DNA of 64,000 nucleotides, taken from IMG/VR virus record IMGVR_UViG_3300024239_000015, positions 169,378-233,377 of that record. One strand, written 5' to 3'. Numbering within the stretch: the first letter of the stretch is position 1; each line of letters starts with the position of its first letter. Position numbers and translations under genes: made by a program. Of this stretch, positions 47,569-63,278 are shown piece by piece. The notes beneath the pieces were generated by a model. That model did not search any database. It was not told the DNA's origin and was given only the letters and a program-made list of their open reading frames with translations.

Positions 47569-47595
47569 GTGAATGGGTAGTAGTACCTCATTCAC
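47569..47595 (-). promoter_or_regulatory. Conserved 5'-leader hairpin, copy 1
   Basis: GTGAATGAGGTACTACTACCCATTCAC, 4 nt downstream of the promoter motif. Confidence 0.65.
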
Positions 47596-47599
47596 CGTG

Positions 47600-47630
47600 A
47601 TATTAAGTATCTATAATTTATTCGAAACGG
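47600..47630 (-). promoter_or_regulatory. Putative early promoter, copy 5
   Basis: CCGTTTCGAATAAATTATAGATACTTAATAT. Confidence 0.7.
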
Positions 47631-47985
47631 TTTTCTTTTGTTGTTCAAAACACTCCGCTAACAAAGCAGCGTAGTTAGCGTCGATCCCACAAACAAGATA
47701 CGGACAATCACTATACCGTTCTCTCCCTACTGTCACAAACCCTACGTAATTTAACGCAGAAAGAAACAGGGGGTGGGCTGTCGCCACCCCCACTTCAAAA
47801 CGGTCTTCTGCGCGAGTAGAGGTTGTATCCTGCCACATGACGTCGATAAACGTCGTGGCTTGTTGGTAAAGATCTTCGAGAATCACAAGACCGGGACCTT
47901 CTCGTTTGAAGAGGTCAGCGATCATTTTCTCTACCTCCACGCCAAACATAAATACAGCCATTTCTTTCGACACGTGTATTGCCAT
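47611..47985 (-). CDS. Hypothetical protein
   Basis: AAGGAG RBS. Confidence 0.65.
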   Translation of the reverse strand: MAIHVSKEMAVFMFGVEVEKMIADLFKREGPGLVILEDLYQQATTFIDVMWQDTTSTRAEDRFEVGVATAHPLFLSALNYVGFVTVGRERYSDCPYLVCGIDANYAALLAECFEQQKKTVSNKL

Positions 47986-47986
47986 T

Positions 47987-48439
47987 TTAAAACTCCTTTA
48001 CTCTTTCGTAGAAATCGACCAACGCTTCAGTGTCGTTCACTGTGACGTCGTGTGCTGTGATGCCAACAGAACCGAGCTTAGTCGTTAAGTCAGCCCACAT
48101 CGCAACAAGCCTTTCATCTGACGTGCCTGGTGCGGCAGCGTGTAACTCGACTAACGTCCCACGAATCATGGTGGTTACACACAACGTATACTTATCTACA
48201 CGCAGCGTTTTTGAATGTGAGTAACGACTGATTTCTTCGTAGGTCAGTAAACCTTGCAGATTTTTGTGTTCTGCGTTACGAGAATCAAAACCCTGATGTC
48301 TGATCCACCACGCGGTGTTTTCAACCGCGTTTTCTAACGCCTTACGCGCAGCCCTTTCTTGTTTATACGAATTCCATTTTACTACAAGAGCTTGTAGAAA
48401 CGAGTGAACTCGTTTTGGAATATTTCTTAAATGAACCAT
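47987..48439 (-). CDS. Hypothetical protein
   Basis: AAGGAG RBS. Confidence 0.65.
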   Translation of the reverse strand: MVHLRNIPKRVHSFLQALVVKWNSYKQERAARKALENAVENTAWWIRHQGFDSRNAEHKNLQGLLTYEEISRYSHSKTLRVDKYTLCVTTMIRGTLVELHAAAPGTSDERLVAMWADLTTKLGSVGITAHDVTVNDTEALVDFYERVKEF

Positions 48440-48451
48440 TTTAAAACTCCT

Positions 48452-49294
48452 TTATTTTGTTGGTGTTAAATGGTGAGTAACCAACCACTCGTTGAGCGTG
48501 GATACAACACCCCGGTGGTTGTTCTTACTACGCCAGTTGGTCACAACCCCATTGTACAAACCAGACGCTTCTGTAATGAACCCAAAGAGTTCAGGTAAGT
48601 ACACGCCAGGTTGAACGACAATAACGATAGGTCGACCTTCAGGGAATGTTCGGATGAAATCCACCAGTTGGTGTAAATCGTCGCAATGCTCTAACAACTC
48701 ACGTGAAAGTACAGAATTCGCCCCTGAAGAATCCAGCTTACTTTTTAACTCTTCAGGCGTCACGTTACAGTCTTTATGAACACAAAGCAACGCCCACTTT
48801 GTTTTCCCTTGCATGAGTTTCGCATAACTGCTCAGCAGCTTAACGCGATTCATCGGCTGTTTGTACGTGAGCACATCCAACGTCGTTTCTTTCTCAACCA
48901 GTATAGGCTCAAACTCCCACCCGTGTTCTTCTAACCACTTCCATTGTTCAGCGTTGATCTCTAAGTCCAACGAGAAAGGGAAGCTCCAGAATGGATGGTT
49001 TTCCTTACGCATCCTTGTATGAAAACGGGGACGACCTTTATAACCGTTGTGTGAGAGTAACCGCTTCACCGCAGGCACCGCCAGACGGTACGAGAAAGTT
49101 TCTTTGAAACGAACCGACTGTTCTAGCAAGTACTCGTCTGGTTTTACGACACCTGCCGTGTAGTGAACCAGAATTAACTGACGAACCGTCTCTTTGTGTT
49201 CCCCTCCCTTACTTTTCAGTAGAGTGAGTTGTCTTTCTACTTCAGGGCGTATCAAGGCGCAGCGTAGAGAGTCGATTGGTTTTACTTGAGGCAT
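48452..49294 (-). CDS. Hypothetical protein
   Basis: GGGAG RBS, 280 aa. Confidence 0.65.
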   Translation of the reverse strand: MPQVKPIDSLRCALIRPEVERQLTLLKSKGGEHKETVRQLILVHYTAGVVKPDEYLLEQSVRFKETFSYRLAVPAVKRLLSHNGYKGRPRFHTRMRKENHPFWSFPFSLDLEINAEQWKWLEEHGWEFEPILVEKETTLDVLTYKQPMNRVKLLSSYAKLMQGKTKWALLCVHKDCNVTPEELKSKLDSSGANSVLSRELLEHCDDLHQLVDFIRTFPEGRPIVIVVQPGVYLPELFGFITEASGLYNGVVTNWRSKNNHRGVVSTLNEWLVTHHLTPTK

Positions 49295-49342
49295 GTTGTA
49301 ACTCCCATAACAAAAATAAAAGAAAGCGTAGGGAGAAAACCC

Positions 49343-49936
49343 CTACGCGTGACAGACCACAGGAGTCGGCTCGCTGTAAGCGCAGCGTAACTCCACCGAT
49401 AATTTCCCGTGAGTGACCCACTTGGATCTCTCCATGTACTCCACCGGCTGTCGGTTTGAGGCTTTCTGATAATACATCCCAACCTGATGTAAACAACGAC
49501 AAAGCTTTACGGTCGTTTCATGAATGTCGTAGTAATGTCGTGTTACTTTCTGGTGGTCTCTTAACGCACAGGTCACGGCGTGTTCGATGGTCGTACTGTT
49601 AAACGACGCCGTGCGTGAGTAAAACGTATAGAAGCAAGCACCAGCGTAATAGAACCTGAACTCGAAAAGTTCTGATCTCAAAGGGTGACCCAACCACTCG
49701 TGGGTGAGCGTTTTATCGCCCCACGGAACGACAATCTTCCGTTGGTCAGCTGAAACAACCAGTGACTGTGAGTTTTCTACAGCAGGGAGGTCCTTCGCTA
49801 GTTGTAGAAACCGCACCATCTGTTCCACTTCGTGCGGGAACTTACTGGTGCGTGTATAAATTTCACGCGTTTGTTTGTATAAGGTAGACGTTCCCACTAA
49901 GGTAAGCCTACTGTAGGTAAATTCTTTTGAGTACAT
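49343..49936 (-). CDS. Hypothetical protein
   Basis: AAGGA RBS. Confidence 0.6.
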   Translation of the reverse strand: MYSKEFTYSRLTLVGTSTLYKQTREIYTRTSKFPHEVEQMVRFLQLAKDLPAVENSQSLVVSADQRKIVVPWGDKTLTHEWLGHPLRSELFEFRFYYAGACFYTFYSRTASFNSTTIEHAVTCALRDHQKVTRHYYDIHETTVKLCRCLHQVGMYYQKASNRQPVEYMERSKWVTHGKLSVELRCAYSEPTPVVCHA

Positions 49937-50093
49937 TTTTAGAATCCTTCTAATTGATCAGATGTACGTTTAAACGTACGTAAACCCATTCCTGAGACGT
50001 TTTAAGGGTGGTGGGTATAAACCACTAAGGAATTGAAGAAAAACGTCCTATAACGCATTACAGAGCGTTTTGTGAGGGGTGGTAATTTACAGG

Positions 50094-50124
50094 CATAGAG
50101 GGAGCACGAAGCTCCCTCTCTATG
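50094..50124. terminator. Hairpin terminator
   Basis: CATAGAGGGAGC-ACGAA-GCTCCCTCTCTATG. Confidence 0.7.
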
Positions 50125-50129
50125 TCGTA

Positions 50130-50540
50130 TCAGTCAGGTAGTCTTTCTAACACCACGCTTACTGTAGATGCACCGCAATTGTTCACTAACACCACCGAAC
50201 TGTTAGGGTAGTCTTTGCGGATGTCTTCTTTAGCGCGACCCACGTAGATCTCGATGTGATATCTTTGTGTGTCGTACTTCAGACAGACTAATGACTTGTC
50301 GGTGGAATCTAACACCGAGGTGTCCATAGAACGCAACAACCCTTCCAGCTCCGATTCTGACACGCCCTGCACGCCCAGCTGCGCGGCTAAGGAGCGTTTG
50401 TTGGTCGACGTATCCCAGTGCTTGAGAATCGCTTCCATTTTCGCTGACGTCAGTTCCAGACCGTAATGAAACTCCATCGTACCGTAATACTGAACAGTTT
50501 CGTTCCACGGATGGTAAACCACGACTAATTTCTTATTCAT
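50130..50540 (-). CDS. Hypothetical protein
   Basis: AAGGAG RBS. Confidence 0.65.
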   Translation of the reverse strand: MNKKLVVVYHPWNETVQYYGTMEFHYGLELTSAKMEAILKHWDTSTNKRSLAAQLGVQGVSESELEGLLRSMDTSVLDSTDKSLVCLKYDTQRYHIEIYVGRAKEDIRKDYPNSSVVLVNNCGASTVSVVLERLPD

Positions 50541-50545
50541 TTACT

Positions 50546-51211
50546 TTACTCCTTAGTGTGATCGCGTTTAAACGAGTTCTCAGTCCAAGGTATAGGACGT
50601 AACGTCTGTAACATCACGTGAGAATCGTCTAAACTACGTAAGACGTTTTCGACGATTTGTAACATGGGTTTATCCATACGTACTTCCACAAGGGGTTCGG
50701 AAATTGGACACCGCTCCCCTTTATGCCGTAGTAGTTGAATGTAGTACTCCACAACGACACCGTTTGTGTTTAAATACAATTCCAAAGCTCGGAAGAACTT
50801 TTCGATGAAATCTGACGCATCACCTAAATACTCAGCACGGAAACTACAAACGTGTTGGTATGTTTGTAAGTGAGTTTCGAGCTTATCTGGAACAGTCGTA
50901 GGTGGTTTGTATTCACCGGCGGATTCGTTATTCACTTCCCAGTAGAAAACCTCCCAATACCCATTTAAAGAGTAGCCCATCTTCCTGTAAAGCTCGCGCC
51001 ATACTTCTGAGTTTTTATTCAATCCGTTTTTATAAAACTGATGTACAATTTCATTCAAACCGATAGCTTCGTATAACTCACAAATGAACGGATCGGCCTG
51101 CCAACGCAACACACCATCTACCAATACAATCGGGTGGTTGTGGTGTGTTTCCGTCTTTAACATTTCTTGGTAGTCTTGTGGGACTAAGTCCCGTTGTACT
51201 ATGGTGGTCAT
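50546..51211 (-). CDS. Hypothetical protein
   Basis: GGGAG RBS; 'ELYRKMGYSLNGYWEVF'. Confidence 0.65.
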   Translation of the reverse strand: MTTIVQRDLVPQDYQEMLKTETHHNHPIVLVDGVLRWQADPFICELYEAIGLNEIVHQFYKNGLNKNSEVWRELYRKMGYSLNGYWEVFYWEVNNESAGEYKPPTTVPDKLETHLQTYQHVCSFRAEYLGDASDFIEKFFRALELYLNTNGVVVEYYIQLLRHKGERCPISEPLVEVRMDKPMLQIVENVLRSLDDSHVMLQTLRPIPWTENSFKRDHTKE

Positions 51212-51216
51212 TTACT

Positions 51217-51924
51217 TTACTCCCAATCTTCGGGCGTTATAGCCCACATTTTGTTTTTAGGACGTTTCTGCGCCCACGTCGCATAACTGACTTTCAGCGT
51301 TACTGCTACAGGAGGGTTGTCTAAGTCAAGTGGTGTTTTTGCAATCACCGTAACGTCAGACATCCTTACTCCCGTGTCCGTTGCTATTTTCAGCATACGC
51401 GCAACACCGTTGATCAGCGTGTAGGGTTTGTGCCCTAACTCCTTTAACACATCCCCTAACGTACCACCTGCTGTCGATGGGTTACTCATAGCAGCTTGTA
51501 TACTGACGTCATCTAAACGTGCTAGGTAAATCCGATCGGACGTATGGTGTTCGTACTGAAACACCAAAGCGATGGTCGGTATTGGTGTTTCGAGATCTTC
51601 CATCAATACGTCTAAATAAGAAATGCACGAAGGAATATCTCCATGTACCACTTTCGACTCACCGATGTTCTCTACGGGGTCGATTAGAATGACTCGATCA
51701 CTTACAGCAATCAAGTCTTCTAACCCTTCCGTTGTATCCCGCCAACAGTAGCCCACTACCGCCTCCAGAGTTTCAGGAACAGGCTGAAGGTACTCTTGTT
51801 TGAACCGCGCGAGGACGTCTCCCGTCCTTGAGAACTGCAGTCGTTGTACCGGACGATTCTCTGTAGGGCGGAGTAAGTCTAAACGACCTACGAACCCTAC
51901 GTTTCCAACAATTAAAATTTTCAT
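51217..51924 (-). CDS. Hypothetical protein with Rossmann-like N-terminus
   Basis: MKILIVGNVGFVG. Confidence 0.6.
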   Translation of the reverse strand: MKILIVGNVGFVGRLDLLRPTENRPVQRLQFSRTGDVLARFKQEYLQPVPETLEAVVGYCWRDTTEGLEDLIAVSDRVILIDPVENIGESKVVHGDIPSCISYLDVLMEDLETPIPTIALVFQYEHHTSDRIYLARLDDVSIQAAMSNPSTAGGTLGDVLKELGHKPYTLINGVARMLKIATDTGVRMSDVTVIAKTPLDLDNPPVAVTLKVSYATWAQKRPKNKMWAITPEDWE

Positions 51925-52850
51925 CAGTAAATCTCCCCGTAGTGTTGTTTATCTACTACCGTACCAACGTCCAGTTGCTGTTTCGAAAGCAGAAAACCTA
52001 AACCGCTCGCGTGGTTTAATAGTTGTCCTTTTTCAGCAAACGACACCGTGGGGCGATTAGGATGTTTTGTGTTGCTGTACAACGCAGCTGCTAGATACCC
52101 TAATCGTTCTCCCACATCCATGACACATTCGGTGTGTTCTAATGTTGAGGGGTATTCAATCGCAGCCAGGATCGCTTCCCCATCTTTTTGTAAGAAAAGA
52201 GGGTTGTGCTTTAGTGTCAGTAACTCAGTAGGGTTGTTTAGATGAACAACATATCTCACCTGTAAATCCCGTAAAACGTGTACGTAAACCCCCTGGTCTT
52301 CTTCTGAATACCAAGGCGCTGCTTTCAAAGTGATTTCCAACTCCCGATCAAACGAGTACAACAATACATGTCCTTCGTTTAAACGCACTGCGGCTTCACT
52401 TAACCACTTCTGAAACGCATCGATGTTACCTAACTCACCGTCCGGTAGTTCCGACAGCCAACTCCCCACAGCTTCCGCGTCTAACTGATTTAGATCAACG
52501 TGACGGATGTCTAGCGGGTTTTTACCAAACCACGCAACGGAGAGTTCTACCCAAAAAGGTTGGGTGGTATCCACCACTGGTTTCTTTTCAGGTACGACCG
52601 TAGGCACTAACATCCGCCACTGAGTAGCCAATTCAGGAAACTCCACCAGCTCTTCAGCACCCATTTCGTATACAGTACCATCATAACTACTAAATATGAT
52701 TGTTTTGGTAGCCTCATCTACTACATCGACCCGCAGCAACGCATCTTCGTTTAAATCGAACGCAAAGAAGGTCTGGTTGTTTTTCAGAGTATCGGGTATT
52801 ACTAAACCGAACGACGCTTTAGCAAGCGCTAAGATTTCTTCAATAGCCAT
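51924..52850 (-). CDS. Hypothetical protein sharing a domain with 52870..53472
   Basis: 'PFWVELSVA..P.D...DLN......W....N...FQKW'. Confidence 0.65.
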   Translation of the reverse strand: MAIEEILALAKASFGLVIPDTLKNNQTFFAFDLNEDALLRVDVVDEATKTIIFSSYDGTVYEMGAEELVEFPELATQWRMLVPTVVPEKKPVVDTTQPFWVELSVAWFGKNPLDIRHVDLNQLDAEAVGSWLSELPDGELGNIDAFQKWLSEAAVRLNEGHVLLYSFDRELEITLKAAPWYSEEDQGVYVHVLRDLQVRYVVHLNNPTELLTLKHNPLFLQKDGEAILAAIEYPSTLEHTECVMDVGERLGYLAAALYSNTKHPNRPTVSFAEKGQLLNHASGLGFLLSKQQLDVGTVVDKQHYGEIY

Positions 52851-52869
52851 CTTTCATTAATCCTCTTTG

Positions 52870-53472
52870 TTAACTAACCGGATGGTTAATTGTACCAAAA
52901 CCGACAGGTCTGACTTGTATCTGCGGTTGAGCAGCACCAAAAGAATATACACACCCAGAGTTTTTCCCCATATCAGAACGCACCAGGTTAATCCATTTCT
53001 GGAACAATTCAGCATTGTAGTTCCTTTCTGGTAGATACTTCCGCAACCAAAGAACGAGTTCCGTCAAATCTGGAGCGTTTAAGTCGTAACTACACACATC
53101 GGTAGGCGACTCACCGGCTTGCGCTATCGAAAATGTCACCCATAAAGGTTTTTTGGCGTTAGTCAGATCGTATTTCAGGTCCATACGCGCCACGTAGTCC
53201 GCGGCTATGATACCGCACCAGAGACGTAAGTTACCCACCCTTTCACCAGACGGTATTTCAGCTTGGTTTATCACATACTCGATGTGTTCGTGAGCGAGTA
53301 CTGGCGTGATACCCGCAGGAAACGAAGGGTCGAGTGTCACACGTAGTGTGGCGGAATTACCGTAATCGACGATCACACGTCCGGTAGCGCATAACGCTTC
53401 CTCCATCATTGTTACGAGGTGTTGGTTTCGAATGTCTGCAATAACTCGATACATCGGTTTGTTGATCGGCAT
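52870..53472 (-). CDS. Hypothetical protein sharing a domain with 51924..52850
   Basis: 'PLWVTFSIA..SPTDV..YDLN...WL...NAELFQKW'. Confidence 0.65.
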   Translation of the reverse strand: MPINKPMYRVIADIRNQHLVTMMEEALCATGRVIVDYGNSATLRVTLDPSFPAGITPVLAHEHIEYVINQAEIPSGERVGNLRLWCGIIAADYVARMDLKYDLTNAKKPLWVTFSIAQAGESPTDVCSYDLNAPDLTELVLWLRKYLPERNYNAELFQKWINLVRSDMGKNSGCVYSFGAAQPQIQVRPVGFGTINHPVS

Positions 53473-53483
53473 TTTAAAACTCC

Positions 53484-54215
53484 TTATTTGATTCGATACG
53501 CTGGACCTAAGTCCGCTCTGGGGGTGTAATCGATTTGCGGTTGTCCCGCCGCAATTAGTTCCCCCGGCCGTGTTATATCCACTTCGTCGACGTTGACGTA
53601 CGTCTGCGCTAACACCCCGAAGATTTCATCGTTGGACAAATTACCGTAGTTGAAGAAATACAGCGACTCTTCGTCCGAGTCTACACTACGCTTGAACGCT
53701 AACTGCCGTCCTCTCAAAAACATCACGTAACCAGCACAGACCAGCTTACGGTATTCGCTTAACGATTCCGAGTCTGGTACGTGTCCACGTGTATTTAAAA
53801 ACTCGCAAATGTCATCAAACTGCTTTAAGCGTTGTTTGGTGTGTTCGCTAAAGTTTTCTTCGGAGATAACAGCGGTTTCAACCGTTGGCGTCGGCCTGAC
53901 GTAATACGGGTTGTATTGACAATCAAAGTAATCTTTCAACCACTGCAGTCCCTCACGGACTAAAGCTTCGTCGGGTTTTTCGTCTGGGTGTATAAAACAA
54001 ACACTTACGCATGTGGGTGTTGTGACGAGGGGTAAAATACAAACATCACCTTTACGTACCATAAACTTCACACGGAAAGGATCGGATAGCCCTTCCGTCC
54101 CTTCTGCGATAAAACGGTATTCCCAAAAGAGGTCTTTCGTAATTAGTAAGTCCGCTAAAACCTCTGGGACAGTAGCGATTATGGCGTAGGCCATTCCTTT
54201 CTTTAAATTTGACAT
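53484..54215 (-). CDS. Hypothetical protein
   Basis: GGAG RBS. Confidence 0.65.
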   Translation of the reverse strand: MSNLKKGMAYAIIATVPEVLADLLITKDLFWEYRFIAEGTEGLSDPFRVKFMVRKGDVCILPLVTTPTCVSVCFIHPDEKPDEALVREGLQWLKDYFDCQYNPYYVRPTPTVETAVISEENFSEHTKQRLKQFDDICEFLNTRGHVPDSESLSEYRKLVCAGYVMFLRGRQLAFKRSVDSDEESLYFFNYGNLSNDEIFGVLAQTYVNVDEVDITRPGELIAAGQPQIDYTPRADLGPAYRIK

Positions 54216-54221
54216 GGTGTA

Positions 54222-54536
54222 TTACTCCACGAAAAGTTCAGGACGTAGCTTTTTCAGCTCGTTTAATAAAGTAGTTACCACCACTGGGTTTACTGAGGCA
54301 ATGTATTCCGCATCTTCTAATCGAAGATCGTAAGCGACATCGACGGATTCATTATTGGTTAGATATACATTCCCGCTAAAAACGTCTGGCTCCCACGGCC
54401 CTTCAGTCGTTTCTGCTGACAAAGCGTTTTGTATTCTACGGATGTTTTGCCTTAACTCAGCGGTCTGTGTATCCGTTTCACGAAAATCTGACTGAGGTAC
54501 TTCAGTTGCAGTTTTAGCCATCGTTAATGACTCCAT
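54222..54536 (-). CDS. Ead/Ea22-like family protein
   Basis: 'TTEGPWE...DAEYIASVNPVVVTTLLNEL'. Confidence 0.6.
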   Translation of the reverse strand: MESLTMAKTATEVPQSDFRETDTQTAELRQNIRRIQNALSAETTEGPWEPDVFSGNVYLTNNESVDVAYDLRLEDAEYIASVNPVVVTTLLNELKKLRPELFVE

Positions 54537-54582
54537 TAAAAAGAAACAAAAAGAAAAGGGAGCCGAAGCTCCCTGTGTTTTC

Positions 54583-55056
54583 TTAAGCTTGGTAACCAGC
54601 GATGGATACGCACAGCGTGTAACCGTACTTCACCGCATCGTGTCCGACGTTTGGACGGTAACTAAAACCCGTGTAATCCGCGCCTTCTTCGATCAGCGTG
54701 ATTAACTGATCGATCCCCGTCGACAGATACGGTTGATACAGTTTCACCAACTGCTGTAAGCGATCAAACGAGCCAGGGATTAAACTGTTCGCTGTCTCAG
54801 TCAACTGAGCGTCTAAGTCACTAAACGCTTTGTTCAGCGTTTCCTGCGGGTTATGTAGGTACGCTTTCTGATCTACGTCCACAGTGAATTGTAAAGCGCT
54901 GTGGGTAGAAACCGGTTTTAACGTGAACAACAAGGAAATAGTGTTAGTCATAGTAGACTCCTGATTAAAAACTGAACGCTTGGAATGGGTTAAAGCTGCG
55001 ATGATCGGAAGTTCTCCGCGACGGAAACCTCCTACCGGAATAATAACGTCTTTCAT
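54583..55056 (-). CDS. Hypothetical protein
   Basis: Coupled start; internal RBS/ATG at MTNTIS. Confidence 0.6.
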   Translation of the reverse strand: MKDVIIPVGGFRRGELPIIAALTHSKRSVFNQESTMTNTISLLFTLKPVSTHSALQFTVDVDQKAYLHNPQETLNKAFSDLDAQLTETANSLIPGSFDRLQQLVKLYQPYLSTGIDQLITLIEEGADYTGFSYRPNVGHDAVKYGYTLCVSIAGYQA

Positions 55057-55423: not shown

Positions 55424-55825
55424 TTAAACGGGGGTGACAGGCCAGTACAGCGGAGTACCGTCGCCTGAGGTAAATACAAAACAGTACACCGACATACCGT
55501 CAAAATCAACGACGTCGGTCGTCCACTCACAGCGCTCTGCGTTTAATGCGTTTTCTAAGTACGGAGTACCTTTTAACGCATCGTCCGCTAACAACCATGC
55601 CATCTGTAATTGCTTCACAGTAACTACTGTTGTCTCCGTACCTTCCGGTGGGTTAGTAGGTAGTAAAACTAAGTAAACGTCGTCTGCTTGAGCGAACGTC
55701 GTTTCGCGAAGTACGTAACGCGAGCGTTTACGGAAACGCAGACCAGCGGTCGTGTGTTTCACGTAAACAGCCATTGTGTTCAGTAACTCCACTAGACGTA
55801 CGTATGAACCGTCTTTGGAATCCAT
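55424..55825 (-). CDS. Hypothetical early protein
   Basis: Start at MDSKDG after TAAGGAG. Confidence 0.65.
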   Translation of the reverse strand: MDSKDGSYVRLVELLNTMAVYVKHTTAGLRFRKRSRYVLRETTFAQADDVYLVLLPTNPPEGTETTVVTVKQLQMAWLLADDALKGTPYLENALNAERCEWTTDVVDFDGMSVYCFVFTSGDGTPLYWPVTPV

Positions 55826-55885: not shown

Positions 55886-55912
55886 GTGAATAGGTAGTGG
55901 TACCTCATTCAC
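55886..55912 (-). promoter_or_regulatory. Conserved 5'-leader hairpin, copy 2
   Basis: GTGAATGAGGTACCACTACCTATTCAC. Confidence 0.65.
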
Positions 55913-55916
55913 TTCC

Positions 55917-55947
55917 ATATTAAAGACCTATAAAAGTTTCGAAACGG
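55917..55947 (-). promoter_or_regulatory. Putative early promoter, copy 6
   Basis: CCGTTTCGAAACTTTTATAGGTCTTTAATAT. Confidence 0.7.
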
Positions 55948-55959
55948 GTTTTTTTACAG

Positions 55960-55992: not shown

Positions 55993-55996
55993 ACGT

Positions 55997-57307: not shown

Positions 57308-57310
57308 GAG

Positions 57311-58132
57311 TTACTCCTGTGCTTGACTGTAACGTACCACGGTACGATACACAAGGTTTAAACGGTTTGCATCCGTGTAGTAGTTTTGCAAGTACTGCTT
57401 CACCGTCAGAGGAATCTGCTCTTTCTCTAAACACGCTAACGCCCCTAAACCAAACCATAACGCCCCTTGCTCTTGTGGGCTACCCGTTTGTCCTAACAAC
57501 GACTCAAACGTCGTTAAATACGCTTGGAAAGGATACCCTATCACACCCCCTCTCTGTACGTAATGTCGCAGTGGGTGCTGTTCTGGAAGCTCTGCTAAGA
57601 ACGCTTTTGCAAACCCACTCAGCTCTGCTTGTACTGAAACTTCTTCTACAGACAGTAAACGCTCTTGTAGTCTAGACTCTAACGCATGGAAGTACGCAGG
57701 GTTCGTGTACGTGAACAACTCCAGTAAACGATCTTCTGTGCTGTAGTATGTTCCTGCAACCGCTAAGAGTTTATCCTCCACAGATTCTGCAGCACGTAAA
57801 CGATCCAGTAGCTCTCCAGGCATCGCGTGCTCTTCTATACGACTGATCGTGTCTACGAAGTCCCCTAGCACATTTAAGTCTTGTTTTTCAATGTCGTCCA
57901 CGACAATAAACTCGTACTGCTGTAGTGCGTACGCAATACAGTCTGCTAAGCCTTGCTCCAGTAAAAACAACAAGTGGTACGTAGGCTCTGCGTTGAGCTT
58001 ACTGGTGATGTTCTCCAGTACTCCCTCTATCCCTTTGGGTTGTACGGTCTGTAACGTCAAGATTAATTCGTAGGTCTTCCCGTAGCGTTCTGGTGATACA
58101 ACACTACTGAGCCACGTTTGAAATAAGTCCAT
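57311..58132 (-). CDS. Conserved/virion protein (phiKZ gp79-like position)
   Basis: 273 aa, synteny. Confidence 0.6.
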   Translation of the reverse strand: MDLFQTWLSSVVSPERYGKTYELILTLQTVQPKGIEGVLENITSKLNAEPTYHLLFLLEQGLADCIAYALQQYEFIVVDDIEKQDLNVLGDFVDTISRIEEHAMPGELLDRLRAAESVEDKLLAVAGTYYSTEDRLLELFTYTNPAYFHALESRLQERLLSVEEVSVQAELSGFAKAFLAELPEQHPLRHYVQRGGVIGYPFQAYLTTFESLLGQTGSPQEQGALWFGLGALACLEKEQIPLTVKQYLQNYYTDANRLNLVYRTVVRYSQAQE

Positions 58133-58236
58133 ACTCCACCCTTTTCTTGGTTTCTTTTTACTGAGGTTCTTTTTATATATGATGGTTGTGCAGACCTCCC
58201 TAAAGACTTCTCATTATTCTCCTAAAGGAATTAAAC

Positions 58237-58731
58237 ATGAATCGGCCTAAAAAAGACAAACCTTCAACGGCCACTGCCGTTTTAGATAAAATGTACGGCG
58301 ACCAAGCCGCCACTCGTCGTGCAACCCAGTACGGTAAGAAATCTATCGCTGACTTAAAAGCCTTGTCGTCTCAAGCAGCCCAGCTTTTAAATGTAGGTCC
58401 CTTTTTCGGTAAAGTGGGTTTAGACCACATTGAGATCATCAAGCGTGCTCCTGAAGAACGTCAACGTGAGATTGCTGAACTCTCCCGACGTGTGACTTCT
58501 GATATCGCGACCTTCCGTACCCGTTATGAAGCCTTGCGTGAAAGAGAACACGCGTACGAACAATCCGTCCTACAAGGCGCTCAGCGAACGGACCTCGTGG
58601 GTCCTGGTTTAGAGCTCGCGATGGAATACAACAACTGGTTAGGTGAATACACTGAAGTCGTTCAAAACAGCATTGCTTCGTTAAGTGATCTGATCCAACA
58701 AATCATCGAACAGTACCGCGATCACTCCTAA
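58237..58731 (+). CDS. Conserved hypothetical helical protein (phiKZ gp78-like position)
   Basis: AAAGGA RBS, synteny. Confidence 0.65.
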   Translation: MNRPKKDKPSTATAVLDKMYGDQAATRRATQYGKKSIADLKALSSQAAQLLNVGPFFGKVGLDHIEIIKRAPEERQREIAELSRRVTSDIATFRTRYEALREREHAYEQSVLQGAQRTDLVGPGLELAMEYNNWLGEYTEVVQNSIASLSDLIQQIIEQYRDHS

Positions 58732-58743
58732 GGGGACGTAGAG

Positions 58744-60489
58744 ATGCAAGAAGACCAAAACTTAGAAACCTTAGCTGACAAGCTCAATAAAGAGCTAGGT
58801 GAGCAGACTCCTCTGGAAGACCACGAGCACACTGCGAGTGTAGTAGCAGAAGAAACCACAGCAGTCGATGTAGGTGGGGGTATCGTCGTCGTTGATTCTA
58901 CTGCATTAGGTGGTATTGCCGTAGAGCTACCAGAAGGTGTGGAGTTTGAAGTCGCGAGTGACTCAAACTGGGAGTTGGTAGAAACCGACACACCCGCTGA
59001 AGAAGACGATCAGGAACCTGCAGCCCCAGAAATTCCTCTGATCAGAAACTCGGTCATTGACGCGTTCGAAGACCCGTCTCCGCGGACTACAGAAAACTCA
59101 GCGTCTGCAGTCAGCGCCAACTTCCCAAGCTGGTCAAATGACTACCCAGCCCTGTATGGCCTATATAGCAAACTCTCCAGCACCTTAGCAGCGTTAGAAG
59201 CTGCCACACTGAATTCACCTGGCACCGCAGAAGCTGCCGAGTGGGGCGCTACGTTACAAGGAGCATTAGCCGCGGGGTTCCATCCAACAGGCGGAGCGTT
59301 AGACTTACTGACTGAACGCCCCGCTCAGTGGACGAACACACCGTACTACGAAGGGAAGCGGTTAGTTCCTACCCGTGGTCGTCCTACCCCAGAAGGTGAC
59401 CAATACGTCGGTGACTCGATTGCCGCGCGTGTAGCGCAGTCTATCGGTGTCGGTCAAACGGTGACGTTCCCAATGTGGGCGTCTGGTTTTTACGTCACGA
59501 TCAAAGCACCCAACAACGCACGTTTACTGCAGTTGGAACGTCAGATTTCCATGAACAAAGATCACTTAGGGTATGCAACCTCTGGGATGATCTACGCAAA
59601 TGACGTCGCGTATTCACTGGAAACGTTAGTGGGTTACATTTTACAGGACATCGTGGACTGTAACGTACAGAACTGGAACCCAACGCTACTGAAAGAGTTA
59701 ATCCTCTCTCCTGACGTTCAGGTGTTAGCGTTAGCGTATGCGACTGCGATTTACACCAATGGCTTCCCGTTCTCTCAGCCGTGTACTGCACAGCTTGGGA
59801 AATGTTACCACACAGAAACTACGAAGCTTCACTTATTGAAGTGTTTACAAGTCGATGAGTCCAGACTGACGTTTGAACAACTCAAACACATGTCGAGCCG
59901 TGCTACCAAACATACGGTAGAACAAGTCCGTGCGTACCAAGAAAAACACACCGAAAGTCGTGTAGGTACAGCGCGCATTGCTAACGACATCACGGTGGTG
60001 TTCCGTGTCCCTACGTTGTCTGAATACTTCAGCTCTGCTGCGCGTTGGTTAGACGGAATTGAGACGTCGACCAAAGCCGCGTTCCGTGAAGCCTTAGCGG
60101 GCCAAGAACGCTTAGAGTACATGAAACAACAACTGCAAGCGTCATTGTGTCGTCAGTACGGACATTGGGTAAAAGAAGTCATCTTTGATGACCCAGCTCC
60201 TGATGGTGAATCAACGATCCAACGCTCGATTACCGTACCAGAATCGATTGACAAAGCTGTAGACTCTTTCAGTGCGTCAGACGACTACACCAACGTGTTT
60301 ATCGATGGGGTGTACCAGTATATCAACGATCGTACGATTGCACTTGCTGCGATTAACAACTACAAGTGTCCGTCGTGTGACAACTGGCACCACACCTCAC
60401 ACAGCAATCGGTTAGTCCTCCCAATCGATGCGGTGGGTACTTTTTTTACGCTCATGCAATTCAAGTTACTTCAGTACCTCCCGAACTGA
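58744..60489 (+). CDS. Conserved protein (phiKZ gp77-like), possible tail/baseplate assembly chaperone
   Basis: 'PMWASGFYVTIKAP', 'IYTNGFPFSQPC..C', C-terminal CxxC, ends near a T7 slippery site. Confidence 0.7.
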   Translation: MQEDQNLETLADKLNKELGEQTPLEDHEHTASVVAEETTAVDVGGGIVVVDSTALGGIAVELPEGVEFEVASDSNWELVETDTPAEEDDQEPAAPEIPLIRNSVIDAFEDPSPRTTENSASAVSANFPSWSNDYPALYGLYSKLSSTLAALEAATLNSPGTAEAAEWGATLQGALAAGFHPTGGALDLLTERPAQWTNTPYYEGKRLVPTRGRPTPEGDQYVGDSIAARVAQSIGVGQTVTFPMWASGFYVTIKAPNNARLLQLERQISMNKDHLGYATSGMIYANDVAYSLETLVGYILQDIVDCNVQNWNPTLLKELILSPDVQVLALAYATAIYTNGFPFSQPCTAQLGKCYHTETTKLHLLKCLQVDESRLTFEQLKHMSSRATKHTVEQVRAYQEKHTESRVGTARIANDITVVFRVPTLSEYFSSAARWLDGIETSTKAAFREALAGQERLEYMKQQLQASLCRQYGHWVKEVIFDDPAPDGESTIQRSITVPESIDKAVDSFSASDDYTNVFIDGVYQYINDRTIALAAINNYKCPSCDNWHHTSHSNRLVLPIDAVGTFFTLMQFKLLQYLPN

Positions 60490-60920
60490 AAGAACACCAG
60501 TACGTCGCTCATCCATCCTTTGGTTTAACCGTCAAAGGACGAGACTTTATCCAAGACGCACTCAACAAACTCCAAAGGAACCTCGATCCCTTTGAGTGTA
60601 GAATGCTACTGACCGAGTTGTATGAGCTTACGTACGGGATACGGCCTGACGTAGAGAACGAATCTCCTTTAGCGCCTGTGTCGTTTCATGAAGCGAATAA
60701 CACCCTGCGGTACTCTGGGTTGTTTTCCTACGTGGACCGATTTGAGCGTTTAAAAGTAGGAGAGACGTATCGACTCTCGCTGGTGGAGTTTTTAGAACTC
60801 CCTCGTGACATCGCCGATGAGTTGTTAGAGCGGGCGTTACTGCGCCTTCGGGAGAAAGGAAACAGTGTTGACTCTATAGAAGCAAAACTGTCAGAAGAGC
60901 TACGAAAACTAGGGGGGTAA
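60447..60920 (+). CDS. C-terminal extension ORF (tracked as 60603..60920), probably reached by a -1 frameshift
   Basis: The -1 frame is open from 60381 across T-TTT-TTT (60441-60447) to 60920; 'YRLSLVEFLELPRD' resembles tail-chaperone extensions. Confidence 0.55.
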   Translation, partial: YAHAIQVTSVPPELKEHQYVAHPSFGLTVKGRDFIQDALNKLQRNLDPFECRMLLTELYELTYGIRPDVENESPLAPVSFHEANNTLRYSGLFSYVDRFERLKVGETYRLSLVEFLELPRDIADELLERALLRLREKGNSVDSIEAKLSEELRKLGG

Positions 60921-60922
60921 AC

Positions 60923-61387
60923 ATGCCCATCGTCAGTGAAAACGAACACGATCTCTTAGAGTGCCCAGCGCAGACTATACTCTGCCCTGTCAACACGGTA
61001 GGGGTGATGGGGTCTGGTTTGGCTTACTACTTTCGTATGCTCTCTGAACCTTTCTTTTTAAAGTATAAAGAGTTGTGTTTGACTCGTAAGTTTACCATCC
61101 GTACGCTTTGGTTGTACAAACCTAAACCGGAAGAAAACATCCCGTATTGGTTCTTAGCCTTTCCTACGAAACAAAACTGGACGATGCCTTCAAAAGTCGA
61201 ATGGGTTGAAGACAACTTAAAACGATTGGTGGAAGCCATCCCTAAAAAGGGAATTACGTCCTTAGGTGTGCCTTACTTAGGGTGTGGGAAAGGAGGACTG
61301 GATTACCAAAAGGTAGTCCGTCCTCTTTTATACAAGTACTTAGACCCACTGGACATCCCTGTACATATCTGCGAGAGGAAGTTTTGA
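60923..61387 (+). CDS. Macrodomain (DarG/Appr-1-p-like) ADP-ribosylhydrolase
   Basis: 'PVNTVGVMGSGLA', 'FPTKQNW', 'VPYLGCGKGGL'. Confidence 0.85.
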   Translation: MPIVSENEHDLLECPAQTILCPVNTVGVMGSGLAYYFRMLSEPFFLKYKELCLTRKFTIRTLWLYKPKPEENIPYWFLAFPTKQNWTMPSKVEWVEDNLKRLVEAIPKKGITSLGVPYLGCGKGGLDYQKVVRPLLYKYLDPLDIPVHICERKF

Positions 61388-61890
61388 TGCCTGTATTTAA
61401 AATGATTGCTGCTGTCGCGTTTGGTAACTTAGCTGTCGGACAGCAAGGGAAGATCCCATGGAGAATCAAAGAGGACTTACAGCACTTTAAACGCATGACG
61501 TTACACACGTGTGTGGTGATGGGTCGTAAGACGTTTGAATCCTTAGGGTCTAAACCACTCCCAGAGCGTACCAACGTAGTACTGTCTACTCAACCACGCC
61601 CAGTGGATTTAAACCCAGCGGTGGTGTGGTTGAACTCGTATGACGCTGTACTTGAGTACACGAAAGACGAAGAGCTGGTGTGGGTCATTGGTGGTGGGGA
61701 AATTTACGAGTTGTTCTTACCCATCGCACAAGAGCTGGTGCTCACGTGGGTGTTACAGCACGTACCTGACGCAGACGCATTCTTCCCTGACGTCCCGTAC
61801 GAGCACTACACCCTGAAACGAGAAGAGCTCACCTCGACTCCGATTCAGTCATGGGTGATCACGTACACCAAAAAAGAAAGTACGGAATAA
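61387..61890 (+). CDS. folA: Dihydrofolate reductase
   Basis: 'IPWRIKEDLQHFK', 'VVMGRKTFESL', 'PLPERTNVVLS', 'VIGGGEIY', 'DAFFP'; TGATG coupling to the macrodomain gene. Confidence 0.95.
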   Translation: MPVFKMIAAVAFGNLAVGQQGKIPWRIKEDLQHFKRMTLHTCVVMGRKTFESLGSKPLPERTNVVLSTQPRPVDLNPAVVWLNSYDAVLEYTKDEELVWVIGGGEIYELFLPIAQELVLTWVLQHVPDADAFFPDVPYEHYTLKREELTSTPIQSWVITYTKKESTE

Positions 61891-61894
61891 AAGC

Positions 61895-61922
61895 TACAGG
61901 AGGAGCAAGTGCTCCTCCTGTA
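61895..61922. terminator. Bidirectional terminator
   Basis: TACAGGAGGAGC-AAGT-GCTCCTCCTGTA. Confidence 0.75.
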
Positions 61923-61928
61923 TGCCGC

Positions 61929-62519
61929 TTACACTTGTATGGCTGGAACTACATCGGGCCAAATGGCTTTAATAACAATCCACTTTGCTTGCTCTACTGG
62001 CATACCTTGACCGATCGCTTCCGCAGCTTCAATCAAAGAACAACGACGTGGAGTGATGTCCTGCCCCAAGCTAACCAGTTGTCTTGCGACGTGTTTATCC
62101 AAAACTTCCAGCTGATACTGCGTGGTGTGGAATTGCTCGTACGTGATGGTACCCTCAACCACTAAGTTCGCTGCGATGCAGCTGGCCACTTTGTAGTTTT
62201 GCCACTCCGCCGACACACGAACGGTACGGTGTTCTTCTTCGGTGGTAGGAACCACCAACCCCATCAACGCAGCACGACAATAAGGAACAGTCCCAGTATG
62301 CGCGTGAGAGATCGTGCCGTATAAGGCAAAAACTTTATCGATGGTGCGTCTGAGTGTCAGCGCGGCTTCTTCTTGGTTCCGGACCAACGTGGAATCGAAA
62401 GATACCCCGTGTTTAGCAGAGTACCAACACGATTTTAAATTAGGGCGCTTACCGCTACGAACAATAGCAGCAACATTCTTTACGAAACGGATAACGACAA
62501 CAAATAATTGCTTTAACAT
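61929..62519 (-). CDS. Hypothetical protein
   Basis: AAGGA RBS. Confidence 0.65.
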   Translation of the reverse strand: MLKQLFVVVIRFVKNVAAIVRSGKRPNLKSCWYSAKHGVSFDSTLVRNQEEAALTLRRTIDKVFALYGTISHAHTGTVPYCRAALMGLVVPTTEEEHRTVRVSAEWQNYKVASCIAANLVVEGTITYEQFHTTQYQLEVLDKHVARQLVSLGQDITPRRCSLIEAAEAIGQGMPVEQAKWIVIKAIWPDVVPAIQV

Positions 62520-62569
62520 AGTTTAGATTCCTTCTTTGAAAATGGGAGTGTGCGGTTATTTAAAAAAGC

Positions 62570-63217
62570 CTATTCCGCATCTAGCGGAATAGGGAATCTT
62601 GCCCCGTGGTACTGCAGGTAGAATACATCCGTCCGTATCCCACCCAGATTGCTGGTGCCTAGCAAACCAGTTCCAGATGACAAATACATGTTCTTATGGG
62701 TGTCCCACATCCCTTCGGTTCTGAGAGCTTTGATGTATTCGATGCATTCGACTTTCAGAGTTTTCCACTCTTCAAGAAAACTTTCCGGTAAAGAAACACA
62801 ATAAAGCTTGGGGCAACTTTGTGTTTTAGGGGTGTGTTCTCCGTAGATCAGACGGTTTTCGTAGTTGGACGTTACACGTCCCCAGTTGTTAACGATCACC
62901 GACAGTCTGCGATTAAAGTCTTCCAACTTCATCTCTAGTTGGTCCGACCTTAACTTCTTCTGGACTTGCCGGAACAACGCAACGACGTCGATTCCCGCCC
63001 AGTCTGGTTTCGTGCATTCCTCTGGGTCTTTACGAAAAACAAAACGCGAGTAGTCGCGGTACGAGGCTTTGTGCTCCGCGCTGTGTTCAGAAGCTTCCTT
63101 CAGTTCTTTTTCGCGCTCTGCTCCGTTACGATAGACGTTCCTGTCATCGGAGTACGTGTAGTACCAGTCGTGCGCCAGTAACGCTTTGCGGAAGGTTTGT
63201 AAATCTTTTAAGTCCAT
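62570..63217 (-). CDS. Hypothetical early protein
   Basis: Start at MDLKDL after TAGGAG; 'HDWYYTYSDD' motif. Confidence 0.7.
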   Translation of the reverse strand: MDLKDLQTFRKALLAHDWYYTYSDDRNVYRNGAEREKELKEASEHSAEHKASYRDYSRFVFRKDPEECTKPDWAGIDVVALFRQVQKKLRSDQLEMKLEDFNRRLSVIVNNWGRVTSNYENRLIYGEHTPKTQSCPKLYCVSLPESFLEEWKTLKVECIEYIKALRTEGMWDTHKNMYLSSGTGLLGTSNLGGIRTDVFYLQYHGARFPIPLDAE

Positions 63218-63251
63218 GGTCTTTCTCCTAAGGGCGATTGGGGTTACGTTT

Positions 63252-63278
63252 GTGAATGGGTTAGTGTGCCTCATTCAC
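63252..63278 (-). promoter_or_regulatory. Conserved 5'-leader hairpin, copy 3
   Basis: GTGAATGAGGCACACTAACCCATTCAC. Confidence 0.65.

What the first reader, a model, noticed from the sequence alone, without database searches (positions are those of the whole stretch)
47569..63278. Conserved 27-nt bulged-A hairpin at the 5' end of a subset of early transcripts
Seen: three copies (47569-47595, 55886-55912, 63252-63278), each exactly 4 nt downstream of the promoter motif and upstream of unrelated genes. Consensus is GUGAAUG-A-GG(N8)CC-YAUUCAC: a 7-bp stem, a bulged A and a short upper stem. The single stem substitution gives G-U on the mRNA strand. The motifs at 780-800 and 6132 (UGAGU..CUAC..AUUC) look like degenerate relatives. 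Inference: an operator-like RNA tag for a phage protein (stability, translation, or export from the early vesicle or phage nucleus), or part of promoter recognition.
Basis: partly seen in the sequence, partly recalled or inferred. Interest (0 to 1): 0.68.

Follow-up and report, generated by a model that had tools for sequence, protein, structure and literature searches.

The report
Early-promoter 5' hairpin cassette, jumbo phage
Three early promoters of an uncultured phiKZ-like giant phage are each followed, right at the predicted transcription start, by the same 27-base hairpin; the element is real and under selection and travels with the promoter as a recombining cassette, but its function (probably protecting the 5' end of the mRNA) is inferred, not shown.

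Summary
Three exact matches to the hairpin consensus lie on the minus strand at 47569-47595, 55886-55912 and 63252-63278. Chance expects 0.01, and these are the only copies in the 233-kb genome. Each starts 4 nt after the AT-rich box of a conserved promoter that has 13 strong copies, all on the minus strand. The promoter has the architecture of phiKZ and AR9 virion-RNA-polymerase early promoters (AT-rich box, 6N, G+1). By that rule the transcript starts at the third base of the hairpin, so the stem-loop is 5'-terminal. No RNA data exist to confirm this.

A fourth version in a co-occurring strain variant has an identical stem and a new loop. Across the four versions the stem and bulge are 95-100% identical, the promoter 53-77% and the loop 38-88%, so the stem is under selection. 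In that variant the cassette sits in front of a different gene: a 215-aa ORFan plus its terminator is inserted right behind the hairpin in this genome.

Other promoters of the class carry unrelated hairpins at +1 to +6. phiKZ's own early leaders show no such enrichment.

My best reading is a cis-acting 5'-terminal stem-loop within a mobile promoter-leader cassette. A specific RNA operator or a DNA operator remains possible. There is no Rfam match.

The parts
47569..47595 (-). Hairpin copy 1: GTGAATG-A-GG-TACTACTA-CC-CATTCAC. Predicted +1 at 47593.
   Evidence: Exact pattern match. Fold -13.3 kcal/mol, z -4.6. Covariance-model E 7.5e-9.
55886..55912 (-). Hairpin copy 2, with loop TACCACTA and C>T in the 3' arm. 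Predicted +1 at 55910.
   Evidence: Identical in the 97.7%-identical strain contig L057.
63252..63278 (-). Hairpin copy 3, with loop CACACTAA. Predicted +1 at 63276.
   Evidence: The orthologous site in variant L052 has the same stem with loop TACAGAAA.
47600..47630 (-). Early-type promoter 1: CCGTTTCGAA-N4-TTATAG-N5-TTAATAT.
   Evidence: Pattern and nhmmer matches.
55917..55947 (-). Early-type promoter 2, preceded by a GC-rich terminator hairpin at about 55964-55987.
63283..63313 (-). Early-type promoter 3, preceded by a terminator at 63321-63340.
47556..47568 (-). Post-hairpin block GAATCCCATTTTC. Related blocks are AACCCAATA in copy 2 (about 55875-55883) and AACCCCAAT in copy 3 (63237-63245).
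   Evidence: Alignment. The same 13-mer follows the hairpin in L052.
62538..62547 (-). Orphan remnant of the leader (TCCCATTTTC) upstream of the 196-aa gene. It marks the right-hand junction of the ORFan insertion.
   Evidence: read laying joint 62547->63304.
62570..63217 (-). 215-aa ORFan behind hairpin 3. Together with its terminator (62569-62593) it is absent from the co-occurring variant.
55424..55825 (-). 133-aa gene behind hairpin 2, no family match.
46400..47530 (-). 376-aa ORFan behind hairpin 1.
780..835 (-). Same promoter class (805-835) followed by an unrelated weak hairpin at +1 to +19 (798-780).
   Evidence: Not a covariance-model relative.
6990..7049 (-). Same promoter class (7019-7049) followed by an unrelated hairpin at +1 to +23 (7012-6990).

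Best explanation
The 27-nt element is the initially transcribed part of a promoter-leader cassette of a phiKZ-like jumbo phage. The promoter is of the kind used by the virion-packaged multisubunit RNA polymerase for early genes. Transcription is predicted to start at the G that is the third base of the element. The nascent early mRNA would then begin, with no unpaired 5' nucleotide, with a bulged stem-loop: 5 bp, a one-base bulge, then 2-4 bp.

The most likely job of such a 5'-terminal stem-loop is to act in cis on the fate of the transcript, by shielding the triphosphate end from 5'-end-dependent decay (the RppH / RNase E type) before the phage has made any protective proteins. The three copies share a sequence because the promoter and hairpin move as one unit by recombination in front of unrelated ORFan genes. 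Selection then keeps the stem intact.

Shown: the element exists, its register to the promoter is fixed, the stem is under selection, and the cassette is mosaic with an indel polymorphism at its edge. Inferred: the position of the start site, that the RNA rather than the DNA is the active form, and the stabilising function.
For: (1) Promoter class. There are 13 strong copies, all on the minus strand, most of them directly behind an intrinsic terminator. They do not score as sigma-70 promoters. They align position for position with TATATTAC-6N-G promoters in relatives L009 and L010 and in phiKZ itself. AR9 early promoters are AAATATATATTAT-(6N)-G+1, and the phiKZ and phiR1-37 start sites lie 6 nt downstream of the consensus (PMC5312081; PMC7598289). 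The phage has phiKZ-type capsid and RNA-polymerase genes. A homologue of phiKZ gp55 lies 2 kb downstream of one of these promoters.

(2) Start site. A G-A dinucleotide 7 nt after the AT-rich box is present in 12 of 13 promoters. This places +1 at base 3 of the hairpin.

(3) The hairpin keeps an exact register to the promoter, but its distance to the start codon varies from 34 to 60 nt.

(4) Four versions, including L052: stem and bulge 95-100% identical, against promoter 53-77%, loop 38-88% and flank 20-63%. Variable columns number 5 of 8 in the loop against 1 of 19 in the stem (Fisher P 0.004).

(5) The first 30 nt of transcripts from this promoter class are more structured than their composition predicts: mean z -2.1 against -0.06 for controls, P 3e-5, and still P 1e-3 without the three copies. 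Eight of the 13 minimum-energy folds pair from +1.

(6) The orthologous promoter in relatives with 48-52% RNAP-beta identity is also followed by a hairpin, of different sequence.

(7) Cassette mobility. L052 combines a promoter most like the copy at window 14941 (91%; copy 2 77%) with the common stem and a copy-1-like flank, and sits in front of another gene. Both forms coexist in two runs.
Against: - There are no RNA data, so the start site is inferred only by analogy.
- Absolute folding energies of the leaders are not lower than the genome background (P 0.01-0.15).
- Five of the 13 promoters have no 5' hairpin.
- phiKZ's 21 early leaders show no enrichment of structure (mean z -0.17).
- In relatives L009 and L010 the hairpin starts at +7, which would protect the 5' end less well.
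- There is no compensatory substitution in any of the 9 base pairs, so structure-only selection is not demonstrated. The stem is more conserved than the promoter itself, which hints at sequence-specific recognition.
- Complementarity extends to positions -2 and -1, which are predicted not to be transcribed.
- Sense and antisense strands fold equally well. The last two points are as expected for a DNA palindrome.
Confidence: 0.4

Rival explanations
1. The hairpin is a sequence-specific RNA operator. A phage (or host) RNA-binding protein recognises the bulged stem on these three early mRNAs and sets their stability, processive antitermination, localisation or timing.
For: - The stem and bulge sequence is invariant in four versions while the promoter around it has diverged to 53-77% identity.
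- Other promoters of the same class start with only GA in common, so promoter requirements do not explain the conserved GAATGAGG.
- A second short block, AAYCC(C)AWT, is conserved just 3' of the hairpin and is not in a constant reading frame.
- Operons 2 and 3 contain internal terminators that would need read-through.
Against: - No candidate binding protein was identified. The downstream genes are unrelated ORFans.
- The loop is hypervariable, unlike MS2 or boxB-type operators, where loop bases are read.
- The hairpin is 34-60 nt from the start codons, so direct translational occlusion is unlikely.
- There are only three copies in one lineage, none in relatives, and no Rfam family.
Confidence: 0.25
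2. The element acts as DNA. It is an inverted repeat (GTGAATG, 13-bp spacer, CATTCAC) spanning -2 to +25. It would serve as an operator for a dimeric DNA-binding regulator that shuts off, or tunes, three early promoters, or as a promoter-proximal element sensed by the virion polymerase.
For: - Conserved half-sites with a variable centre are the classic operator pattern.
- Complementarity includes positions -2 and -1, upstream of the predicted start.
- Both strands fold equally well, and there is no G.U bias towards the sense strand.
- The position overlaps the start site.
Against: - The conserved asymmetry (an extra A, with GG/CC inside the 'spacer') has no obvious role in a symmetric DNA site.
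- Other promoters of the class carry unrelated hairpins at the same place, which fits a structural RNA role better than a shared DNA-binding protein.
- Ten of the 13 promoters lack the element, so it is not needed for promoter recognition.
- No regulator was identified.
Confidence: 0.17
3. The element has no function of its own. The similarity is a by-product of repeated copying and gene conversion of promoter cassettes, and the palindrome mainly serves as, or results from, a recombination junction.
For: - The L052 cassette is a mosaic.
- The ORFan insertion junction lies directly behind the hairpin.
Against: Gene conversion would homogenise the loop as well. Instead the loop is the most variable part and the stem the least. 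The leaders of this promoter class are enriched for structure even without the three copies.
Confidence: 0.12
4. The conserved sequence is the start of a short upstream ORF (AUG at bases 5-7 of the hairpin, encoding MRY.Y.FTNPI...) that is translated from a nearly leaderless mRNA.
For: - An AUG is present in all versions.
- After the hairpin, copies 1 and 2 differ mostly at third codon positions.
- In copy 3 the AUG is in frame with the 215-aa gene (ORF 62570-63274).
Against: - The conserved post-hairpin block falls in a different frame in copy 3.
- The loop codons change amino acids freely.
- The AUG is base-paired in the stem, has no Shine-Dalgarno sequence and would sit at +3.
- Each downstream gene has its own good ribosome-binding site.
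- Relatives L009 and L010 have no such AUG.
Confidence: 0.04

Closest known systems
Early (virion-RNA-polymerase) promoters of phiKZ-like jumbo phages (phiKZ TATATTAC-6N-G; AR9 AAATATATATTAT-6N-G+1)
   Same: A long, highly conserved AT-rich box centred near -10, with a conserved G 7 nt downstream. There are many copies on one strand in front of operons of small unknown genes. Spacing is the same as in relatives whose box reads TATATTAC.
   Different: Here the box reads T(A/T)(A/T)A(A/T)TAT, with additional upstream TTAYAG and CCGTNTCGAA blocks. A shared hairpin immediately after the start site has not been described for those phages, and phiKZ leaders are not enriched for structure.
5'-terminal stabilising stem-loops of bacterial and phage mRNAs (ompA 5' hairpin; the stem-loop at +1 of the T7 phi10 leader). 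Named from my own knowledge, not from a tool.
   Same: A stem-loop starting at or within a few nucleotides of +1. Its position is tied to the 5' end and not to the start codon. Different sequences can occupy the same place at other promoters.
   Different: Stabilisation was not tested. Here one particular sequence is kept in several copies, which those generic hairpins do not require.
PeSLs, the composite terminator/early-promoter cassettes that mediate modular shuffling in T4-like phages (PMC2839356, PMC4122927)
   Same: A repeated cassette of about 70-100 bp with terminator hairpin and early promoter, flanking ORFans. Close strains differ by insertion or deletion of an ORFan with its own terminator at the cassette edge, and chimeric cassettes occur.
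   Different: PeSL promoters are sigma-70 type, and their stem-loop is the upstream terminator. Here the promoter is of the jumbo-phage virion-polymerase type, and there is a second hairpin downstream of the start site.
Protein-binding leader hairpins (lambda nut boxB with N; HIV-1 TAR with Tat; MS2 or PP7 coat-protein operators with a bulged purine). Named from my own knowledge, as analogies only.
   Same: A short hairpin with a single bulged base near the 5' end of viral early transcripts. The local motif AUG-A-GG...CC-CAU resembles the MS2 operator stem.
   Different: No binding protein is known, no boxA-like partner was found, the loop is not conserved, and the hairpin does not overlap a ribosome-binding site. 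There is no Rfam match.

Membership tests
phiKZ-like early (vRNAP) promoter | A highly conserved AT-rich element of about 10 nt centred near -10, repeated upstream of presumed early operons | tested here: met
   13 strong copies, nhmmer E 1e-10 to 1e-5, all on one strand. They align with TATATTAC promoters of relatives and phiKZ. The definition comes from PMC7598289.
phiKZ-like early (vRNAP) promoter | Transcription starts at a conserved purine about 6 nt downstream of the box, early in infection and independently of host RNA polymerase | not testable with these tools
   A conserved G-A lies 7 nt after the box in 12 of 13 copies. No RNA run holds this phage.
phiKZ-like early (vRNAP) promoter | The phage encodes split multisubunit RNA-polymerase subunits | tested here: met
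   phrog_2962 RNAP beta, E 1e-117. Homologues are annotated as RNAP beta in jumbo phages. A phiKZ gp55 homologue was found, E 4e-51.
5'-terminal stabilising stem-loop | The stem begins within 0-2 nt of the 5' end of the transcript | tested here: inconclusive
   Met if +1 is the predicted G, or the G two bases upstream. The start site was not measured.
5'-terminal stabilising stem-loop | Lengthens mRNA half-life, depending on pairing and not on sequence | not testable with these tools
   The only indirect evidence is that unrelated hairpins occupy the same place at other promoters, and that no compensatory change occurs within the family.
PeSL-type mobile regulatory cassette | A repeated composite terminator-plus-early-promoter motif flanking ORFans | tested here: met
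PeSL-type mobile regulatory cassette | Indels or replacements between close strains with junctions in the cassette; chimeric cassettes | tested here: met
   L052 compared with the window. Joint 62547->63304 in two runs.
PeSL-type mobile regulatory cassette | A sigma-70-type promoter of a T4-like phage | tested here: not met
   Not flagged by the sigma-70 scan. The phage is phiKZ-like. This is therefore an analogue, not a member.
Lambda-type nut site / HK022 put antiterminator RNA | boxA plus a boxB hairpin with a conserved loop (nut), or two stem-loops of about 70 nt (put); a match to the curated models | tested here: not met
   No Rfam hit at E<=5 in 43000-64000. There is a single hairpin, and its loop is variable.
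MS2/PP7-type translational operator | The hairpin contains or abuts the ribosome-binding site or start codon of the regulated gene; the loop bases are conserved | tested here: not met
   The hairpin ends 34-60 nt upstream of the start codons. Five of 8 loop columns vary.
Dimeric-repressor DNA operator | An inverted repeat with conserved half-sites overlapping the promoter or start site | tested here: met
   This does not discriminate against the RNA reading.
Dimeric-repressor DNA operator | A cognate DNA-binding protein encoded nearby or elsewhere in the genome | not tested
   No Pfam domain in the ten neighbouring proteins scanned. The rest of the genome was not surveyed.

The most novel reading that the evidence does not exclude
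The bulged stem is a dedicated address tag on a subset of the very first phage mRNAs. It would be read by a virion-delivered or early phage protein to control their fate: selective stabilisation, read-through of the internal terminators, or hand-over from the early infection compartment to ribosomes. That would make it the first cis-acting RNA signal defined for early transcripts of phiKZ-like phages.
Probability: 0.12. Interest if true: 0.75.

Novelty: new variant of a known kind. Interest (0 to 1): 0.4.

Why it matters
How phiKZ-like phages protect and sort the first mRNAs made by the injected polymerase is not known. A leader element that keeps an exact register to the start site and is more conserved than the promoter itself is a concrete, mutable handle on that question.

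Separately, the data show that a promoter-plus-leader cassette is a unit of gene shuffling in a jumbo phage. Both the 'with ORFan' and the 'without ORFan' forms coexist in one subsurface population. This extends the PeSL idea, known from T4-like phages, to a different polymerase system.

The limits are real. The phage is uncultured, there are only three copies plus one variant, there is no expression data, and model phage phiKZ shows no equivalent.

Tried and rejected
- Rfam scan of 43000-64000 at E<=5: only a spurious lncRNA hit.
- Search for relatives:
  - IMG/VR holds only near-identical copies of this phage.
  - A variable-loop pattern gave only chance hits inside coding regions.
  - The metagenome scan gave one informative variant, L052, plus two chance hits.
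  - The cultured-phage collection has no DNA match, and the closest capsid protein is <=34% identical.
- The covariance model found no further members in the genome or in relatives at about 50% protein identity. The 'degenerate relatives' are therefore rejected as homologues.
- RNA evidence: no RNA runs exist, only four DNA runs from one study. No base differences were listed within hairpin 3.
- Polymorphism test with L057 (97.7% identical): the differences are clustered in patches, and a 1-kb difference-free stretch covers hairpin 2, so the test is uninformative.
- Strand test by folding energies and G.U counts: no asymmetry.
- Generality test in phiKZ: negative.
- uORF reading: weakened by the frame shift of the conserved block in copy 3.
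- Function of the downstream proteins: no PHROG, Pfam or Atlas lead and no sequence relatives.
- Records behind L008-L010 could not be searched whole.
- phiKZ start-site tables and the Ceyssens 2014 paper are not held.
- Chimallin was not detected: tblastn with phiKZ gp54 found no match in the genome, and the 581-aa neighbour is not similar to gp54 by BLASTP and has no relative among solved structures. Nucleus formation is therefore unverified, although a PhuZ homologue is present.
- Pfam RNAP models are too distant to detect the subunits.

Full report
**What the window is.** The window is the last 64 kb of a 233,377-bp IMG/VR virus record with a 127-bp terminal repeat and 47.8% G+C. It encodes:
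- a phiKZ-type major head protein (phrog_3231, E 1e-145);
- a split RNA-polymerase beta piece (phrog_2962, E 1e-117);
- elsewhere in the genome, a homologue of phiKZ gp55 and of the PhuZ tubulin.

No cultured phage is close: capsid identity is <=34% and there is no DNA match. The runs that hold this DNA are four DNA libraries from one subsurface-metagenome study. No RNA library holds it.

**The observation.** The pattern GTGAATGAGG-N8-CCYATTCAC matches exactly three times, on the minus strand, at 47569-47595, 55886-55912 and 63252-63278. Shuffles expect 0.01 matches. These are the only copies in the genome, by pattern and by a covariance model built from four versions (E about 1e-8; the next hit has E 0.35).

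Each copy folds as a 7-bp stem, a one-base bulge and a 2-4 bp upper stem (dG -10.6 to -13.3; z -3.1 to -4.6). The genes behind the copies (376, 133 and 215 aa) are unrelated to each other and have no family assignment.

- The C>U change in copy 2 is accommodated by a shift of the bulge (A8-U21 paired, G7 bulged), and equally well on the opposite strand. It therefore does not identify the mRNA strand.
- The proposed 'degenerate relatives' are not recovered by the covariance model. The one at 780-800 is an unrelated hairpin in the same position behind a promoter of the same class. The one near 6132 lies on the other strand inside an ORF.

**The promoter.** Upstream of each hairpin lies the motif CCGTNTCGAA-N4-TTAYAG-(R)T(M)T-WWAWTAT. 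An HMM finds 13 strong and 2 weak copies in the genome, every one on the minus strand. Most sit directly behind a GC-rich terminator hairpin whose tail reads TTTATGCCGT. That tail matches the conserved tail of phiKZ terminators (YTTATKYYGT; PMC10914365).

These sites do not score as sigma-70 promoters. The closest relatives I could fetch have 48-52% RNAP-beta identity (loci L009 and L010). In them the positional orthologue of promoter 3 aligns column by column, and its box reads TATATTAC. That is the box I find in front of phiKZ early genes, followed by 6N and a G.

The literature agrees. Jumbo-phage early promoters are AT-rich boxes of about 10 nt centred near -10 (PMC7598289). The AR9 consensus is AAATATATATTAT-(6N)-G+1, and the phiKZ and phiR1-37 start sites lie 6 nt downstream of the box (PMC5312081). 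In this genome a G-A dinucleotide lies 7 nt after the box in 12 of 13 promoters, usually preceded by T.

I therefore infer that +1 is the third base of the 'hairpin' (window 47593, 55910 and 63276). That leaves a 5-bp lower stem that begins exactly at the 5' end. If initiation sometimes uses the G two bases upstream, the full 7-bp stem forms. Either way the stem-loop is 5'-terminal. This rests on analogy, not measurement.

**Is the hairpin constrained, or just duplicated?** The metagenome scan recovered a 2.5-kb contig (L052). The same sequence occurs in two further assemblies. It comes from a variant of this phage: 94% identical upstream and 83% identical downstream.

At the orthologous place of copy 3 it carries a fourth version: the same stem and bulge, with a new loop (TACAGAAA). 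Its promoter is most like the copy at window 14941 (91%), with copy 2 at 77%. The 13 nt after the hairpin are identical to those of copy 1.

| Segment (four versions compared) | Identity |
|---|---|
| Stem and bulge | 95-100% |
| Promoter | 53-77% |
| Loop | 38-88% |
| 30 nt downstream | 20-63% |
| Upstream (non-orthologous pairs) | 27-33% |

Variable columns number 5 of 8 in the loop against 1 of 19 in the stem (P 0.004).

So the stem is the best-conserved part of the whole cassette, which neutral decay after duplication cannot give. Gene conversion would have homogenised the loop too. There is no compensatory double change, however. The data therefore show selection on the stem but cannot say whether the target is pairing or sequence.

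**The cassette is mobile.** In L052 the promoter and hairpin lead straight into the homologue of the 196-aa gene (61929-62519). In this genome, a leader remainder, the 215-aa ORFan and its terminator (62569-62593) are inserted between the hairpin and the block TCCCATTTTC. That block survives as an orphan at 62538-62547.

Laying the four runs on 61500-63900 shows a contig joint 62547->63304 (756 nt skipped, 55 replaced) in two runs. Its depth is 59 against 257 in one and 7.9 against 22.6 in the other. Both forms therefore coexist.

This parallels the PeSL cassettes of T4-like phages. Those are repeated terminator/early-promoter motifs that flank ORFans and recombine (PMC2839356, PMC4122927). 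The difference is that here the promoter is of the jumbo-phage type and the cassette has an extra hairpin after the start site.

**Is a 5' hairpin general?** Folding +1 to +30 or +40 of all 13 leaders gives mean z -2.1 and -1.8 respectively. Random GA-starting sites of the same strand give -0.06 and -0.24. The difference has P about 3e-5, and about 1e-3 when the three copies are left out. Eight of the 13 minimum-energy folds pair from +1. A stricter 'terminal hairpin' score reaches -5 kcal/mol or better in 5 of 13 leaders, against 10.5% of controls (P 0.008).

Absolute energies, though, are not clearly lower than background, and five leaders have no hairpin. The orthologous leaders of L009 and L010 have different hairpins that start at +7. 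phiKZ's own 21 early leaders show no enrichment (mean z -0.17), although the chimallin (gp54) leader has an 8-bp hairpin from +1. The tendency is thus a property of this lineage and is moderate in strength.

**Mechanism.** The hairpin is fixed relative to the promoter (4 nt after the box in all four versions) but lies 34-60 nt from the start codons. That ties its role to the 5' end or to initiation, not to ribosome binding.

The best-supported reading is a cis-acting 5'-terminal stem-loop on early mRNAs, most simply a shield against 5'-end-dependent decay. This is established biology for the ompA and T7 phi10 leaders (my own knowledge). It is attractive here because the first transcripts are made before any phage protein exists.

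I give this reading 0.40. The rivals, with my estimates:

| Rival | Estimate | Main support | Main objection |
|---|---|---|---|
| Sequence-specific RNA operator | 0.25 | Invariant stem, conserved 3' block AAYCC(C)AWT, internal terminators in operons 2 and 3 | Variable loop, no candidate protein |
| DNA inverted-repeat operator or promoter-proximal element | 0.17 | Half-site pattern, complementarity reaching -2/-1, no sense/antisense asymmetry | Conserved asymmetric bulge, unrelated hairpins at sister promoters |
| Pure hitch-hiking or recombination junction | 0.12 | Mosaic cassette, insertion junction directly behind the hairpin | Loop varies while the stem does not |
| Short upstream ORF | 0.04 | AUG present in all versions | Conserved block changes frame in copy 3 |

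**Comparison and novelty.** The promoter is a member of the known jumbo-phage early-promoter kind. The hairpin matches no Rfam family, and I found no description of such a leader element in the jumbo-phage transcriptome papers I read. It works most like a 5'-terminal stabiliser embedded in a PeSL-like mobile cassette, but it is a member of neither family in the strict sense. I rate it a new variant of known kinds, of moderate interest. The decisive experiments are start-site mapping and compensatory stem mutants.

Noticed in passing
window 62548-63303 (minus strand); L052: Presence/absence polymorphism of a 215-aa ORFan with its own terminator, inserted directly behind the promoter-hairpin cassette. 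The form without it coexists at roughly a quarter to a third of the main form's depth in two runs.
   Followed up: yes
window 700-835 (minus strand): The early-type promoter at 805-835 is followed by a 5' hairpin. About 70 nt further on there is a second hairpin (GGTCAC..GTGACC, 711-727) with the tail CGAGCTTTT, and no ORF lies in between. This could be a short leader RNA or an attenuator of about 95 nt, like the 5'-UTR-derived short RNAs reported for phiKZ.
   Followed up: no
L009:5024-5094 and L010:5462-5532: The orthologous leaders of two relatives share an 18-nt second element (GTCGTGTGCTACAGCGAC) followed by a T-run, although their first hairpins differ. This may be a conserved attenuator.
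   Followed up: no
genome-wide; e.g. window 55948-55990 and 63314-63340: Terminator hairpins in front of the promoters end in TTTATGCCGT. This matches the conserved tail of phiKZ terminators (YTTATKYYGT), so the terminator design is shared across distant phiKZ-like phages.
   Followed up: partly
genome C1:18365-20070 (minus strand), outside the window: The homologue of phiKZ gp55 (RNA-polymerase beta) aligns in two pieces separated by about 380 nt, which may be an intron or an insertion. In relative L010 a neighbouring gene carries a LAGLIDADG domain.
   Followed up: no
window 52624-58652 compared with L057: A 97.7%-identical strain differs in dense patches (up to 24 differences per 200 nt) separated by stretches of up to 1 kb with none. 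This pattern indicates mosaic recombination among co-occurring strains.
   Followed up: partly
L018 (phiKZ) 45582-45609: The leader of the phiKZ nuclear-shell (chimallin, gp54) gene can form an 8-bp hairpin starting at the predicted +1 (dG -8.8, z -2.7). It is one of only a few phiKZ early leaders that do so.
   Followed up: partly
window 44100-64000: Sigma-70-like promoter matches are fewer than in shuffled sequence (10 against 22 +/- 4.6). This is consistent with a genome that does not rely on host polymerase.
   Followed up: no
window 58744-60489 (plus strand): A 581-aa protein of a conserved jumbo-phage family of unknown function (phrog_4585) lies close to the RNA-polymerase gene, in the same neighbourhood that holds chimallin in phiKZ. 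It is not similar to phiKZ gp54 by BLASTP and has no relative among solved structures.
   Followed up: partly
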